A stretch of 64,000 nucleotides of DNA from Auanema rhodensis (taxonomy: Eukaryota; Animalia; Nematoda), in NCBI GenBank assembly GCA_964057225.1, contig OZ059894.1, positions 10,850,001-10,914,000 of the forward strand, written 5' to 3'. Below the pieces are notes generated by a model. The model saw nothing but the letters and a program-made list of their open reading frames with translations, searched no databases and was not told the DNA's origin. This document shows, piece by piece, positions 2,815 through 64,000 of this stretch (position 1 is its first letter; every line of letters starts with the position of its first letter). The position numbers were made by a program, and so were the translations under genes.

Positions 2815-3735
2815 CAATACCGGACAAAAAGGTATAGCCTTTTCGAAAAATGTGTTTTTTTCTAAAAATTTAATTCTAACAAAATTGAAAAAAAAAACTA
2901 GATAATGTATAATCTTCAAAAAAAAGAATATATAAGAATGATTATCACTTTTAGCATTTTAAAAACACTTTCTTTTAATTTTTTAAACCATTCATTGATT
3001 AAAAGCTGTTACATCTAATGTTAGATACATATCAAATACTATTTCTATTTCTTTTTTTCCACTGTTCTCGTCTCCAATTTAGATGTTCAGGAGCTCAAAG
3101 CACACGGGCTTCATAATTCTTCGCAGATATAAGCGGTTTCTTCACTGGTCGTCTTCCGTTCAGTCCAGAAGCACAAAGACGTCTACGCATAGTCCTAACT
3201 GACGGTCGTTGGTTTTCTGGAAGTTGGAGATCCAGCTGAATCTGAGTTGCATCTTTTCTTGGGTCATTCTTTCTTGGGCTTTTTTTCTTTATACTTCTTG
3301 GACTCCACCTCTTCAATAAGTAGGTTTTTCTACTGATACCAAACTGAGTTGGCAGTTCCTGCTGTGTCATGCCCTGACTTGTCCCTCTAATTATCGTATG
3401 TTGAGCTTCTTCGGACAGATTTTTCGTTCATCTTATTCTTGCTAAGAAGAATAAAAATTGTCAAATTTCAAAGATTATAAAAAACTTTGATAAAGACTTT
3501 AAAAAATTGATAAAGAAAACCAAAACTTATAAGTAATTAAAATGTGTTTTTAGCGTGTTTTTAGCGTATTTTCAGTTTTTATTCAATATGTCAAACCTTT
3601 CTGAAAATAATAATTTTTCATGTTTTTATAATTAAGACCTTCATATTTATCTAAAGTATAATTAGTTTTGGTAATGATCCAAGAAAGTTATATCAACTAT
3701 TTACTCAAAAGACTATTTCTTTTTGTCCGCTACTA
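2815..3735 (-). mobile_element. Internally deleted, degenerate Tc1-family element (921 bp), relative of the intact element at 60598-62232
   Basis: Diverged TIRs (caataccggacaaaaaggtatagccttt / gactatttctttttgtccgctacta) flanked by TA. Residual ORF 3095-3370 (QFGISRK..PRKDATQI..DLQLPENQRPSVRT.RRRLCASGLNGRRPVKKPLISAKN) matches the N-terminal half of the 60895-61926 transposase; the DDE domain is absent. Confidence 0.92.
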
Positions 3736-60597: not shown

Positions 60598-62232
60598 CAG
60601 TAGCGGACAAAAAGATATAGCCTTTCTGAAATTTGTGTTTTTTTCATTCTATTTTTTTCTAACTATCTTGAAAAAAACTAGTTAATGTATTTTCTTTATG
60701 AGAAATGAATATATAAAAGTTATTATTACTCTCAGAACTTCGAAAACTTTTTGTTTTTGTTTTTTAATCTTTTATTGACCATATGCCCTTTAACTCAATG
60801 TAACATGCATATCAACACTAACTAGAATTATTAAAAAAAAAAAATTTCCAAAACTAAATTACATAATGATACTTCATAAAACATTAATGCACTCCTAATA
60901 CTTTGTAGCAAACCCGTTTGCTTCAATCACCGCCCGACAGCGTTGAGGCATTGACTCCAGCAAAGCATCGATTCGATGCTGTGGAATACTTCTCCATGCT
61001 TCTTCCAATTGTGAGAATTTTTCTTCTTCATTTCTTGCATGTCTTCCTGTTAAACATCTGCCGAGCTCTTCCCAAAGATGTTCTATGGGGTTCAAGTCAG
61101 GACTTTGACTTGGCCAGTCCATTCGCTGAAGGTTCTTGTCTTCGAACCACTTTTTCACGTCATGGGAGCGATGTTTCGGATCATTGTCGTCTTGGTAAAT
61201 GAAATGTTGTCCGATGTTTTCTTCAGCATACGGCAACATTGAGTCCTCCAGAATCTTCAAATAGTCGAATCTTGTCATGATTCCTTTAATGTGGACCAGA
61301 GGACCGACTCCATTTGCGGAGAAACAACCCCAGACAAAACAGGAACCTCCGCCATGTTTCACTGTTGGAGTTTGGTACTTCGGGTCATACCGTTTCCCGA
61401 TAGGTCTTCTTATATAGTGTATACCGTCTGTTCCAAACAGGGTATACTTGCTCTCGTCTGAGAAGACGACCTTTTTCCACTGATCCTGTCCCCAACTTAG
61501 ATGCTCACGAGCCCAAAGCACACGGTCTTTACGATTCTTTGCAGAGATGAGCGGCTTTTTCACGGGTCGTCGTCCGTTAAGTCCAGATGCACAGAGACGT
61601 CTTCGAACAGTTCTAACGGACGGTCTCTGGTTTTCTGGAAGCTGTAGATCCACCAGAATCTGTGTTGCATCTTTTCTGGGATCGCTTCTGGAGATCCTGA
61701 TGATGTTTCTGTCGGTTACTCTGTCCGTAACCCGTGGTCGTCCTGTGCTTTTTTTATGAATAAAGCCTCCTTGAACTGTCCACCTTCTTAACATGTTTGT
61801 AACAGTCTTTCTACTGATTCCAAATTGAGCAGCGAGCTGTTGATGCTTCATCCCTTGGCTTCTCCCTCTGATTATCGCATTTTGAACCTCCTCGGACAAG
61901 TTTTTTGAACCTCTTTGTCTTGCCATGCTGAGAAGATGAAAAATTATGTATTTTTTAATGAAATATAGAAAAAAAATGATAAAGACTTAGAAAACTTCAA
62001 AAAAAAACCAAAAAATTATTGTGGTTCAAATTGTGTTTTCAACGTATTTTTAATATGTTTTTAGTTTTTGCTTAATATGGATGTCAACATCTTTCTGAAA
62101 ATATTTTTTTTACATGTTTTTATATTTTAAACATTATTATTATTATTCATCTAAAGTGCAATCAGTTTTGGTAACGATCCAAGAAAGTTATATCAATTTA
62201 CAGAAAAGGCTATATCTTTTTGTCCGCTACTG
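60598..62232 (-). mobile_element. Intact Tc1-family DNA transposon, 1635 bp
   Basis: Perfect 28-bp TIRs CAGTAGCGGACAAAAAGATATAGCCTTT; TA target duplication at 60596-60597 and 62233-62234; single transposase ORF. Confidence 0.97.
60895..61926 (-). CDS. Tc1 transposase, 343 aa, DD34E
   Basis: Paired-like HTH, GRPR, VFSDESKY, TVKHGGGS..VWGCF, DNDPKH...SPDLNPIEHLW. There are 34 residues between the second D and the E (counted). Confidence 0.97.
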   Translation of the reverse strand: MARQRGSKNLSEEVQNAIIRGRSQGMKHQQLAAQFGISRKTVTNMLRRWTVQGGFIHKKSTGRPRVTDRVTDRNIIRISRSDPRKDATQILVDLQLPENQRPSVRTVRRRLCASGLNGRRPVKKPLISAKNRKDRVLWAREHLSWGQDQWKKVVFSDESKYTLFGTDGIHYIRRPIGKRYDPKYQTPTVKHGGGSCFVWGCFSANGVGPLVHIKGIMTRFDYLKILEDSMLPYAEENIGQHFIYQDDNDPKHRSHDVKKWFEDKNLQRMDWPSQSPDLNPIEHLWEELGRCLTGRHARNEEEKFSQLEEAWRSIPQHRIDALLESMPQRCRAVIEANGFATKY

Positions 62233-62242
62233 TATATACATT

Positions 62243-62571
62243 ACCAGTATAGTAATAGAACACATATTGAAGATTAATTCGATAAGAACAATTTATTGAC
62301 GTAGAGAATGTTTGTTCCGAAAAACTACAATATTAAACTATAAAAGTAACAAAAGCGTAGAGGCAGCAAAGACATGAATAAACATAAATGTAAATACAGA
62401 ATTACCAGGTAGTACATAAGTATGACAAAAAATTATAAGAAAGCCATGAAAATAGAAGGTTTGTGAACAAATGAGAGGTACATCTTTGATCGTATAGTCA
62501 TTTCTAAACCGTTCGTATGCTGCAGCATCGTCATAAGCGTCACTCAAGTTGAATTTCCATGTGTACTACAC
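62243..62571 (-). mobile_element. Second, degenerate U2-element junction: element 3' end + U2 nt ~39-78 fragment + start of another element 5' end
   Basis: Minus strand: ttgtagtttttcggaacaaacattctctacgtcAATAAA-ttgttcttatcgaattaatcttcaatatgtgttctatt-actatactggt, matching 62757-62795, 62716-62756 and 63601-63611 respectively. The 5' boundary (GTGTAGTA at 62564-62571) is tentative. Confidence 0.7.
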
Positions 62572-62610
62572 GATTTTCATTCTTATTGTTACATTCTTTC
62601 CCTGAGGGAA

Positions 62611-63700
62611 TGGGCCGTTCCCGCCAGCAGTGCAAGAGCGGGTCGACCCGTGAGGTGGAGCTAGCAAGCCAGCATCTACCTCAAGTCTCAAAAATCGGTT
62701 AACCTTATTGTGAACCAATGGAACACATATCGAAGGTTAATTCGATAAGAACGATTTATTGAAGTAGGAAATGTTTTGCCCCGTAGGACTACAAGTAAAT
62801 ATTATCTAGCACAAGGCTATTAGAGAATGATAAGATACTACCTGCACTAAGTGCGTCGCATCGTAAAGGGAAAAAAAATTAAACAATGGGAGTTTAACAG
62901 CATGAAATTGAGAGAAAAGACATATCCGAGTGTGAATAAAATTACGGGTGAACGGAACATGGAGTACGAGAGACATACAAAACGAGACTAAGTGAAAAGA
63001 AAAAGTCTTGTATCACGTTCATGAAGGTTCGACGGATCCGGTAAGAAGCTGCGGGTTCAGAAGGTCAGCTTTCATCTCGTAGTCGTGGCGCATCAGGAAT
63101 TTGTGAAGCTTTCCGGCTTTGCAGACGGCTGTATTGGTCCTCGTAGGATGGTGGAAGATGTTGTCGCTTAGTGATGTTACACATAAAGATATGCAAAAAT
63201 AGAACAATTCAAAGAAAAAGAGCACAATTAAAACGAGATTTGGAGAGAAGAGAAGTCTTATATCACTTTCGATGGTTCGGAAGCTCCAGTCTGCTGCTGC
63301 GGTTTAGGGGGTGCAACTGGCATGTCGGAGGCGTAGCACATCATAGGTCAAGCTTGCTGGACTCCCGGCTCGGCTGGTGGCTGTGAGTTTTCCTTGTGCT
63401 TGTTCTCGGTGGTGGTCCCTGGGCTGTCTCTTCACCAAAAATTACTATACTAATTGCACATTTCATTTAAACGACCCATTTCAGAAGCTTTAAGAGGAAA
63501 AGCTACAATTAGCATAGGACCGCCTCAAGGCCTGGTGGATCATTCAATTTAGTTTCAATCGCCAAGTATAGCGGCCTGGGCCCTTGGGTCAATTCACTGA
63601 ACCAGTGTAGTATCGATTGTTCAATGGAACACATATCGAAGGTTAATTCGATAAGAACGATTACTACACTTTGATCTTAGCCAAAAGGCCGAGAAGCGAT
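62611..63700 (-). ncRNA. U2: U2 spliceosomal snRNA gene (about 184 nt) split by an 865-bp insertion; probably inactivated
   Basis: 63700-63662 = ATCGCTTCTCGGCCTTTTGGCTAAGATCAAAGTGTAGTA (stem I and branch-point recognition GUAGUA). 62755-62611 continues with GTTCTTATCG.., Sm site GATTTTTG (62689-62696) and stem-loop IV TTGCACT..GGCCCA. Confidence 0.95.
62757..63621 (-). mobile_element. Non-autonomous U2-snRNA-targeted insertion element (Utopia/Keno-like target site), 865 bp
   Basis: Flanked by an exact 41-bp direct repeat (62716-62756 = 63622-63662, U2 nt 39-79); ends in AATAAA at the 3' junction; no RT or endonuclease ORF. Confidence 0.8.
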
Positions 63701-64000
63701 ACAGCATAGCCATGAGTATCAAAGACATCAAGCAAATGTATCGTACTTGTTACGAGTGCACTCTCTCATTTGAATATAAAAGTGTGGTTTGACAATCTTG
63801 ACTGTACAGGTCATAAATGGCTCATATAAACTGTGGATTTACTCAACTTTTGGACTTATTTTTTTCTTATTCGAAGCGCTGCACTTTTTTCTATTCTTTT
63901 TATTCAAATACTTGTATATAGTTTTATATGTACGGTTGCAAAGTTTCCGAATATTTTATATATTTTTATACAATAATTAGGAGAAGGTTAATACAATGAA

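What the first reader, a model, noticed from the sequence alone, without database searches (positions are those of the whole stretch)
62611..63700. U2 snRNA gene interrupted next to the branch-point recognition sequence by an 865-bp non-autonomous element with a 41-bp target duplication
Seen: U2 nt 1-79, then 865 bp of foreign sequence ending in AATAAA, then U2 resuming at nt 39/40 through to its 3' end, so nt 39-79 is exactly duplicated. Known: the non-LTR retrotransposon families Utopia and Keno insert site-specifically just after U2 GUAGUA. Inference: this is a SINE-like or deleted passenger of a U2-specific retrotransposon that could be transcribed from the U2 promoter. The identical 41-bp repeats suggest a recent event, and 41 bp is long for a target-site duplication.
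Basis: partly seen in the sequence, partly recalled or inferred. Interest (0 to 1): 0.8.

Follow-up and report, generated by a model that had tools for sequence, protein, structure and literature searches.

The report
Non-coding rider in U2 snRNA gene
A roundworm U2 snRNA gene is split by an 865-base protein-less mobile element that sits exactly where the U2-specific retrotransposon Utopia integrates, and most likely borrows both that element's enzyme and the U2 gene's own promoter.

Summary
On the minus strand, U2 nt 1-79 (63700-63622) is followed by an 865-bp insert (63621-62757) and then by U2 nt 39-190 (62756-62605). An exact 41-nt repeat flanks the insert.

The genome holds 12 almost identical copies ("A"). 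All 12 lie at this same U2 position, inside a 1.3-Mb U2 array. That array also holds 324 intact U2 genes, two sister non-coding families (B about 786 bp, C 745 bp; 35 copies together) and 47 full-length copies of a 3.7-kb Utopia-type element ("X"). X encodes an intact 1092-aa protein with zinc fingers, a reverse transcriptase and a restriction-like endonuclease.

A has no coding remnant. It shares with X only the insertion site, a terminal 3' box of about 21 nt, and a short 5' motif antisense to U2.

Two X copies carry a U2 leader that starts exactly at U2 nt 1 but is joined to non-U2 DNA. The template RNA is therefore a transcript from the U2 promoter. The "41-bp TSD" is then most likely an RNA-borne leader overlap, not a staggered cut.

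Fresh jumps were not shown, and array recombination clearly contributes to copy number.

Earlier notes of this scan describe the same element families elsewhere in this genome. I found no published non-autonomous partner of Utopia in the papers searched.

The parts
63622..63700 (-). U2 snRNA gene, nt 1-79 (5' half, ahead of the insert). Includes the U6-pairing region, the branch-point box GUAGUA (nt 34-39) and stem-loop IIa.
   Evidence: Rfam U2 match; identical to the first 79 nt of intact U2 genes.
63622..63662 (-). Upstream copy of the 41-nt repeat (U2 nt 39-79).
   Evidence: Exact direct repeat D1.
62757..63621 (-). Rider element A, 865 bp, non-coding.
   Evidence: 12 copies at >=99.9% identity, all at this U2 position. 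Longest ORFs are 41-68 aa, with no similarity to Utopia proteins.
63604..63617 (-). Anti-U2 box (A nt 5-18, CGAUACUACAC core), complementary to U2 nt 32-43 including GUAGUA.
   Evidence: The MFE fold of U2(1-79) plus A head pairs U2 31-43 with A 6-18; z = -3.2. Duplex energy was reached by 29 of 2000 shuffles. The same motif, interrupted, lies in X's 5' UTR.
63496..63610 (-). Conserved head (A nt 12-126), 83% identical to families B and C.
   Evidence: No Rfam family and no HDV-like topology found.
62879..63270 (-). Family-specific middle (A nt 352-743), unrelated to B, C or X and to anything else in the genome.
62757..62878 (-). Conserved tail (A nt 744-865), 73% identical to B and C.
62778..62789 (-). 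Tail hairpin GUCC-UACG-GGGC (UNCG-type loop).
   Evidence: Pairs in 16 of 16 cells in A, B, C and the spacer relic, with one compensatory C-G to U-A change and two wobble changes. Weak statistics (40 of 500 shuffles).
62755..62775 (-). 3' terminal box AACATT..TA..TTCAATAAA, shared with the autonomous element X.
   Evidence: The best match of the rider's last 24 nt anywhere in the 3.7-kb X is X's own 3' end (nt 3699-3722 of 3729); 1-9 of 1000 shuffles reach that score. Alignment A3.
62716..62756 (-). Downstream copy of the 41-nt repeat.
62605..62756 (-). U2 snRNA gene, nt 39-190 (3' part with Sm site and 3' stem-loops).
   Evidence: Rfam U2 match; identical to intact copies.
63701..64000 (-). 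U2 upstream (promoter) region. It is shared with array units for 551 bp and runs past the window end.
   Evidence: blastn against array units. The proximal 30 nt are identical to 55 of 58 sampled U2 genes. Promoter function is inferred.
62239..62340 (-). Relic in the array spacer: rider-type tail (62292-62340), decayed U2 nt 41-78 (62254-62291), and the first 15 nt of a rider head (62239-62253).
   Evidence: Present about 310 nt downstream of the U2 gene in array units.

Best explanation
The insert is a non-autonomous, non-coding retroelement (family A of at least three sister 'rider' families). It lives only in U2 snRNA genes, at the integration site of Utopia-type retrotransposons.

Proposed cycle:
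1. The interrupted gene keeps its U2 promoter, so RNA polymerase II makes a co-transcript: U2 nt 1-79, then the rider, then downstream U2.
2. The enzyme of the resident autonomous Utopia-type element X (1092 aa: zinc fingers, RT, CCHC finger, restriction-like endonuclease) nicks the bottom strand of another U2 gene just after GUAGUA. It then reverse-transcribes the rider RNA, recognising the shared 3' terminal box.
3. The cDNA runs to the RNA 5' end, so it carries a copy of the U2 leader. This leader anneals to the 5' half of the target gene and sets a uniform 5' junction. The new copy therefore reads U2 1-79, rider, U2 40-190.

On this model the '41-bp TSD' is the overlap between the RNA-borne leader and the remaining target. 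Each insertion rebuilds a complete target site upstream, which allows stacks.

Shown: site specificity, copy number, absence of coding capacity, the shared 3' box, the co-resident intact autonomous element, and a leader starting at U2 nt 1 for X. Inferred: that riders use X's enzyme, that riders also use a leader-bearing co-transcript, and that they still move.
For: - **Site specificity.** 12 of 12 A heads follow U2 ..CCATTG. 35 of 35 B/C heads do the same. All 46 rider-type 3' junctions abut U2 nt 40.
- **Same 3' junction as X and as published Utopia** (PMC4640811). Metagenome relatives of X are also followed by U2 from the same nucleotide.
- **X looks active.** At least 42 intact 1092-aa ORFs and 47 full-length heads, all in the array. 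It has an RVT_1 domain; the CCHC finger and PD..D..K motifs are conserved; the closest solved structures are R2 proteins.
- **Riders behave like non-autonomous families.** Head and tail are conserved between A, B and C, while the middles are unrelated.
- **Shared 3' box** with X.
- **Leader is RNA-borne.** Two X copies have a leader starting exactly at U2 nt 1 but joined to a spacer relic (C1:11203172) or to promoter position -40 (C1:11211698). Metagenome relative L070 has target U2 1-55, a 10-nt filler, a diverged U2 1-70, then the element.
- **Duplication length is a family trait.** It is 40 for A, B, C and the relic, and 57 for X, as expected for an inherited leader and not for a single enzyme's fixed stagger.
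- **Precedent.** R2 RNAs that retain upstream 28S sequence give uniform 5' junctions (PMC3774820).
Against: - No new insertion, RNA or polymorphism was seen.
- The array is homogenised. Flank haplotypes cannot separate transposition from unit duplication.
- B copies lie in a 3.3-kb periodic block, and the 4-copy A stack alternates two variants. Both show that DNA-level amplification contributes to copy number.
- Similarity between riders and X is short (about 21 nt at the 3' end), and X carries 3-7 extra nt after the box.
- No 5'-truncated rider was found in the sample.
- Leader-at-nt-1 junctions were found for X only, not for riders.
- No insertion was seen in the dispersed U2 genes on other contigs.
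Confidence: 0.7

Rival explanations
1. The 41 bp is a classical target-site duplication. The endonuclease nicks the bottom strand after nt 39 and the top strand after nt 79, and fill-in duplicates nt 40-79. The rider RNA carries no U2 leader.
For: Long real TSDs exist in this superclade: 20 bp for reptile Utopia (PMC4640811), and an 'exceptionally long' TSD for rotifer R9 (Gladyshev & Arkhipova 2009, reference 38 in PMC3774820). Relative L070 shows a true overlap of about 17 bp (target U2 1-55 upstream, U2 39-190 downstream) in addition to its leader.
Against: Riders (40 bp) and X (57 bp) differ although only one enzyme family is seen in the genome. Two X copies carry U2 nt 1-39 where the target had none. 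A stagger cannot produce that.
Confidence: 0.2
2. There was one (or very few) ancient rider insertion. Today's 12 copies and all stacks arose only by unequal crossing-over, unit duplication and gene conversion within the tandem array. The rider is no longer mobile.
For: Copies differ by at most 1 change. The 4-stack alternates wild-type and G549A variants, as a duplicated dimer would. B shows a periodic 3.3-kb higher-order repeat. The 41-nt repeats can mediate every observed stack order by recombination. The window copy shares 2,020 bp at 99.9% with another A-bearing unit. All copies are confined to one array.
Against: Three rider families with conserved ends and free middles imply selection on cis-acting ends, and therefore repeated replication through RNA. 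X is clearly active-looking in the same array. A sits in varied contexts: solo, X-A, X-A-B, A4-X.
Confidence: 0.25
3. Riders are mobilised by a second Utopia lineage with a rider-type 3' end, not by X.
For: At C1:10961683-10961769 an 87-nt rider-like tail (83% identical to C) ends in a regular U2 junction. It lies about 57 nt beyond the predicted 3' end of a stop-containing X-like ORF copy. An earlier scan note (s1-407086) makes the same claim.
Against: The 57-nt gap equals X's leader overlap, so this may be a stack of X followed by a 5'-truncated rider. All 49 scored ORF matches to a distant query are equally about 56% identical, which points to one lineage. No other ORF-bearing element ends in the rider tail: the 46 junctions equal 11 A plus 35 B/C. 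The letters could not be read.
Confidence: 0.15
4. Assembly artefact, or a spliced-out intron of a functional U2 gene.
For: Tandem arrays are hard to assemble. Removing the insert plus one repeat copy would restore an intact U2.
Against: 12 copies have identical junctions in different contexts. There are no splice-site-like boundaries (CCAUUG|AACAAU ... CAAUA|AAUCG). 324 intact genes supply U2.
Confidence: 0.02

Closest known systems
Utopia (U2 snRNA gene-specific non-LTR retrotransposons with restriction-like endonuclease; Kojima & Jurka 2015, PMC4640811)
   Same: The autonomous element X has the Utopia layout: N-terminal zinc fingers, RT, CCHC finger, PD..D/ExK endonuclease, no Myb. It has the same 3' junction directly after GUAGUA. 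It forms tandem stacks in U2 genes, as in Nasonia, and shows strict U2 specificity. The rider uses the identical site.
   Different: That paper reports no TSD for arthropod families, 20 bp for reptile families, and loss of the U2 5' part in oomycetes. Here there are uniform 40-bp (riders) and 57-bp (X) duplications that appear RNA-borne. The paper describes no non-autonomous partner (the word does not occur). About 20% of roughly 410 U2 genes are occupied here, whereas disrupted genes are the majority in Nasonia and Phytophthora.
R2 SIDEs (short internally deleted elements of R2 in 28S rDNA; Eickbush & Eickbush 2012, PMC3414825, as summarised in PMC3774820)
   Same: Both are protein-less parasites of a site-specific RLE retrotransposon. 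Both sit at the same target nucleotide, are co-transcribed with the host RNA gene, and rely on a 3' end recognised by the partner's enzyme.
   Different: SIDEs are evident deletion derivatives that keep the R2 5' ribozyme and a long stretch of the 3' UTR. Rider A shows no ribozyme and no internal homology to X, and shares only about 21 nt at the 3' end. Its host gene is transcribed by Pol II from an snRNA promoter, not by Pol I.
R2 elements whose ribozyme cleaves upstream in 28S (PMC3774820)
   Same: Host-gene sequence kept on the 5' end of the template RNA is copied into cDNA. It is proposed to anneal to the target and give uniform 5' junctions.
   Different: In R2 the leader is at most 36 nt and is produced by self-cleavage. 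Here the leader appears to begin at the host gene's transcription start and is 79-96 nt long, so it overlaps the target and produces a visible duplication.
SINEU (crocodilian SINEs with U1/U2-derived heads; PMC4494074)
   Same: Non-autonomous retroelements whose 5' part is U2 sequence. They have no internal promoter.
   Different: SINEU copies are dispersed, are mobilised by Tx1-type elements, and their transcription is unexplained. The rider always lands behind a real U2 promoter, because it inserts into U2 genes.
Keno (Tx1-clade, APE-type, U2-specific)
   Same: Same U2 nucleotide.
   Different: Keno encodes an AP-endonuclease. X has none and carries a restriction-like endonuclease instead.

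Membership tests
Utopia (applies to the autonomous partner X) | C-terminal CCHC zinc finger plus PD..D/ExK restriction-like endonuclease | tested here: met
   Translation shows CRRC..H...C followed by RPD..D..E..K. R972, P973, D974, D989, E995 and K1011 are nearly invariant across 12 relatives.
Utopia (applies to the autonomous partner X) | Central reverse transcriptase domain of the R2/NeSL-type superclade | tested here: met
   Pfam RVT_1, E = 5e-28. The best PDB sequence matches are R2 proteins, E = 1e-67 to 1e-50.
Utopia (applies to the autonomous partner X) | N-terminal zinc finger(s) and no Myb domain (criterion used in PMC13188248 to separate Utopia from R2) | tested here: met
   C2H2-type motifs lie in residues 17-66. 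No Myb family was found at E <= 0.01.
Utopia (applies to X and to the rider) | 3' junction immediately after the U2 branch-point box, with U2 resuming at canonical nt 39 | tested here: met
   Met for all A, B/C and X copies examined, and for relatives L066, L068, L070 and L075.
Utopia (applies to the autonomous partner X) | RT phylogeny inside the Utopia clade | tested here: inconclusive
   No named Utopia reference sequences were available. The best named hits come from taxa listed as Utopia hosts (Dendroctonus, Daphnia, turtles, nematodes), and the U2-flanked metagenome relatives fit. No tree was built.
Keno (Tx1 clade) | Apurinic/apyrimidinic-type endonuclease N-terminal to RT | tested here: not met
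   No Exo_endo_phos-type domain was found.
SIDE-type non-autonomous derivative | No coding capacity; same target nucleotide as the partner | tested here: met
   no ORF remnant; same site.
SIDE-type non-autonomous derivative | Derived from the partner by internal deletion (both ends homologous to the partner) | tested here: not met
   blastn finds no A/X similarity. Only a 21-24-nt 3' box and an 8+6-nt 5' motif are shared.
SIDE-type non-autonomous derivative | 5' self-cleaving (HDV-like) ribozyme | tested here: not met
   No Rfam ribozyme at E <= 10. A topology scan found none in A, and none conserved between A and B. Cleavage itself cannot be tested here.
Classical SINE | Head derived from tRNA, 7SL or 5S with an internal pol III promoter | tested here: not met
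   Rfam finds only U2 in 62500-63800.
Non-autonomous retroelement (general) | Demonstrated mobility (polymorphic, de novo or 5'-truncated copies) | not testable with these tools
   There is one assembly and no reads. All sampled copies are full length. Flanks are homogenised.

The most novel reading that the evidence does not exclude
U2 genes here host a small ecosystem in which both the autonomous Utopia element and its protein-less riders replicate through snRNA-promoter co-transcripts that begin at U2 nt 1. The RNA-borne U2 leader guides 5' joining and rebuilds a full target site at each insertion, which allows self-extending stacks. A 5' box antisense to GUAGUA masks the branch-point-binding sequence of the chimeric RNA, or alternatively marks it for processing. 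This would be a Pol II snRNA-gene counterpart of the R2/28S co-transcript strategy, with a template-encoded 'homology arm'.
Probability: 0.3. Interest if true: 0.7.

Novelty: new variant of a known kind. Interest (0 to 1): 0.55.

Why it matters
Utopia is known, but I found no description of a non-autonomous partner for it in the papers searched.

The system offers natural evidence on how a site-specific RLE retrotransposon completes its 5' end. Two X copies whose inserted DNA begins exactly at the host gene's transcription start show that the template is a host-promoter transcript. They also show that the long 'target duplication' can be template-encoded.

That is the same principle now being explored for R2-based transgene insertion, where the 5' end of the RNA template influences joining (PMC11331408).

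The case also shows how a multicopy spliceosomal RNA gene family tolerates heavy parasitism: about 90 of roughly 410 genes are occupied, and relics are built into every array spacer.

Tried and rejected
- **Ribozyme at the rider 5' end.** Rfam at E <= 10 gave nothing but U2. My own HDV-like double-pseudoknot scan found no hit in A; the single B hit is not conserved, and the X hits span the start codon. Shuffles give similar counts.
- **Deletion-derivative origin.** blastn and tblastn of X and 118 relatives against A and B returned only noise.
- **Internal repeats in A.** The 25-nt pair is not supported by self-blast.
- **Relatives of the rider elsewhere.** An exact 21-nt core of the conserved head found nothing in metagenome contigs.
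- **Flank haplotypes to separate transposition from unit duplication.** A-bearing units all carry the majority haplotype, so this was uninformative.
- **Anti-U2 complementarity.** Modestly significant for A (29 of 2000 shuffles) but not for B or X by the crude duplex test.
- **Tail hairpin covariation.** Consistent but weak.
- **Second autonomous lineage with rider-type ends.** Not found among scored ORF hits. One ambiguous locus could not be read.
- **Whole-array census by fetching 1.3 Mb.** Counts come instead from pattern searches and a 196-kb sample.

Full report
**Observation**

Rfam finds U2 (RF00004) twice on the minus strand of the window, at 63700-63583 and 62777-62605. Read on the minus strand, the locus has three parts:
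- U2 nt 1-79 (63700-63622);
- 865 bp of unrelated sequence (63621-62757) ending ..TTCAATA;
- U2 from nt 39/40 to nt 190 (62756-62605).

The repeat finder reports a single exact 41-nt direct repeat, 62716-62756 and 63622-63662, spaced 906 nt. This U2 has one extra A ahead of GUGUAGUA, so GUAGUA ends at nt 39. Because the insert ends in A's, the duplication is 39-41 nt. With the canonical Utopia site (GUAGUA|) it is nt 40-79.

Intact U2 genes with exactly the same sequence exist, and 324 of them match exactly across both junction positions. The empty site is therefore documented.

**Genomic setting**

The window is G000:C1:10850001-10914000. From about 10.91 to 12.22 Mb this contig carries a tandem array of U2 units about 2.46 kb long.
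- The window copy is the terminal, partial unit. Homology to array units runs from window 62233 to beyond the window end.
- A full-length SL1-like RNA array on another contig (sub-threshold scores) and nematode top hits for the element's protein fit the 'nematode' label given in earlier scan notes.

**Copy number and specificity**

- **Family A.** A DNA search of the whole assembly finds 12 copies of the insert at about 100% identity, and a 27-nt head pattern finds exactly 12. All 12 are preceded by U2 ..CCATTG and followed by U2 nt 40 onward. Eleven full copies differ from the window copy by at most one change. The twelfth runs into N's.
- **Families B and C.** Two sister families share A's ends. 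B is 785-790 bp and C is 744-745 bp. The head (A nt 12-126) is 83% identical and the tail (the last 120-150 nt) is 73% identical. The middles are unrelated.
- **Junctions.** All 35 B/C-type heads follow ..CCATTG. The 46 rider-type 3' junctions in the genome are accounted for by 11 A plus 35 B/C-type. None lies outside the array.

**The autonomous element at the same site**

Between copies of the same U2 repeat lies a 3,729-3,747-bp element, which I call X. It has a 1092-aa ORF with this layout:
- N-terminal C2H2-type fingers;
- RVT_1 domain (E = 5e-28);
- a CCHC finger;
- an RPD..D..E..K restriction-like endonuclease motif;
- no Myb domain and no AP-endonuclease domain.

Other facts about X:
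- The closest solved proteins are R2 proteins.
- The genome holds at least 42 intact ORF copies and 47 full-length 5' ends, all in the array.
- Its 3' end abuts U2 nt 40, like the riders. Its 5' end follows U2 nt 96, so its duplication is 57 bp.
- Relatives recovered from metagenomes at 31-41% identity are likewise followed, on the same strand, by U2 resuming at the canonical nt 39.
- Kojima & Jurka (PMC4640811) define Utopia by exactly these features, and they note that Keno uses the same nucleotide. X is therefore a new Utopia-type family. RT phylogeny against named references was not done.

**What the insert is**

- **No coding capacity.** A has no ORF longer than 68 aa. It shows no similarity to X or to 118 relatives at protein level, and no blastn similarity to X. 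It is therefore not a simple internal-deletion derivative.
- **First shared feature: a 3' terminal box.** The box reads AACATT..TA..TTCAATAAA. The best match of the rider's last 24 nt anywhere in X is X's own 3' end, and only 1-9 of 1000 shuffles reach that score.
- **Second shared feature: a short 5' motif.** The motif is AATCGATA..CTAC, antisense to U2 around GUAGUA.
- **A conserved tail hairpin.** A UNCG-looped hairpin lies just upstream of the 3' box in A, B, C and an old relic, with one compensatory change. The statistics are weak.
- **What the pattern means.** Conserved ends with free middles across three families is the signature of cis-acting sequences kept by repeated replication.
- **No ribozyme found.** Neither Rfam nor a topology scan detected one.

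**How the duplication arises**

If one enzyme made a fixed staggered cut, riders and X should show the same duplication length. They do not. It is 40 bp for A, B, C and the relic, and 57 bp for X, and it is uniform within each family.

Two X copies in my sample settle the point for X:
- At C1:11203172 the spacer relic (..CTCTACGTCA) is joined directly to ATCGCTTC.., that is to U2 nt 1, followed by nt 1-96 and X.
- At C1:11211698 promoter position -40 (..AAGTACGAT) is joined to U2 nt 1, followed by nt 1-96 and X, which is a 39-bp deletion.

In both cases the inserted DNA begins exactly at the U2 transcription start, in a context where the target could not have supplied nt 1-39. The cDNA therefore ended at the 5' end of a transcript from the U2 promoter.

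A distant metagenome relative shows the same logic: target U2 1-55, a 10-nt filler, a diverged U2 1-70, the element, then U2 39-190.

The R2 literature offers a precedent. 28S sequence retained on the RNA 5' end is proposed to anneal to the target and give uniform junctions (PMC3774820).

By extension, the rider's '41-bp TSD' is most likely the overlap between an RNA-borne U2 1-79 leader and the remaining target. This step is an inference for the riders, because no aberrant nt-1 junction was seen for them.

**Stacks and DNA-level amplification**

Every order of A, B, X and U2 tail occurs across the repeat, including a stack of four A copies followed by X. Each insertion leaves a complete site in the upstream leader, so stacking is expected.

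Recombination between the repeats can produce the same structures, and it clearly acts here:
- the four-copy stack alternates wild-type and G549A copies;
- B sits in a 3.3-kb periodic block;
- flanks are homogenised.

Copy number therefore overstates the number of transposition events. Current mobility is not shown.

**Age**

Every array unit carries a relic about 310 nt downstream of its U2 gene. The relic consists of a rider-type tail, a decayed U2 nt 41-78 and the first 15 nt of a rider head. In the window it lies at 62239-62340. The family therefore predates the amplification of the present array unit. The identity of the 41-nt repeats says nothing about age.

**An unresolved locus**

At C1:10961683-10961769 an 87-nt rider-like tail (83% identical to C) ends in a regular U2 junction. 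It lies about 57 nt beyond the predicted end of a stop-containing X copy.

**Comparison with known systems and novelty**

- X is a new member of Utopia.
- The riders work like R2 SIDEs but fail two SIDE criteria: they are not deletion derivatives and have no detectable ribozyme.
- They resemble SINEU only in having a U2 head (PMC4494074).
- The Utopia paper describes no non-autonomous partner, and full-text searches found none.
- The long, family-specific, apparently template-encoded duplication differs from the 0-bp and 20-bp TSDs reported for Utopia.

I rate this a new variant of a known kind.

Earlier notes of this scan describe the same rider families at other places in this genome. I re-derived the counts, junctions and leader evidence independently here.

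**Limits**

- No RNA or population data were available.

Noticed in passing
window 62239-62340 (-), and about 310 nt downstream of U2 in array units (e.g. L034): Every U2 array unit's spacer contains a decayed relic: a rider-type tail, a degenerate U2 nt 41-78 and the first 15 nt of a rider head. The present 2.46-kb unit was amplified after an old rider insertion.
   Followed up: partly
L063/L010 (G000:C1:11203172) and L061 (G000:C1:11211698): Two autonomous-element copies have a U2 leader that starts exactly at U2 nt 1 but is joined to non-U2 DNA. One joins the spacer relic; the other joins promoter position -40 with a 39-bp deletion. Both junctions have 1-2 nt of microhomology.
   Followed up: yes
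G000:C1:10961683-10961769: An 87-nt rider-like tail (83% identical to family C) ends in a normal U2 junction about 57 nt beyond the predicted 3' end of a stop-containing X copy. It is either a 5'-truncated rider or a second Utopia lineage. The sequence could not be fetched.
   Followed up: partly
G000:C1:11633705-11637287 (L002, L003, L007, L008): A four-copy tandem stack of rider A spaced 906 bp alternates two variants (wild-type, G549A, wild-type, G549A). This suggests duplication of a dimer rather than four separate insertions.
   Followed up: partly
window 60895-61926 (-): An intact 343-aa Tc1/mariner-type transposase ORF (HTH_Tnp_Tc3_2 E = 3e-21, DDE_3 E = 1e-12) lies just outside the array boundary.
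   Followed up: partly
L070 and L068 (metagenome contigs B570J13881_100227, B570J13886_100133): Distant Utopia relatives sit in a compact cluster of U2, U1, tRNA, U4, U5 and 5S genes. Their upstream U2 leader copies are diverged (65/71 and 62/69 identity) while the downstream U2 part is intact.
   Followed up: partly
window 63658-63661 (-), U2 nt 40-43, and all 324 intact U2 genes: This species' U2 reads GUAGUA-AUCG-UUCUU where the canonical sequence is GUAGUA-UCUG-UUCUU. The four nucleotides right at the Utopia nick site differ. Whether this relates to pressure from the element is unknown.
   Followed up: no
L064 (G000:C1:12052747): One more diverged X copy (about 97.7% in the last 1.4 kb) ends ..AATAAACCA instead of ..AATAAACCATTAA before U2. 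This is 3'-end microheterogeneity of 4 nt.
   Followed up: partly
G000:C3:6.74-7.10 Mb: A large tandem array of full-length SL1-like RNA matches (54-62 bits, below the 75-bit cut-off).
   Followed up: no
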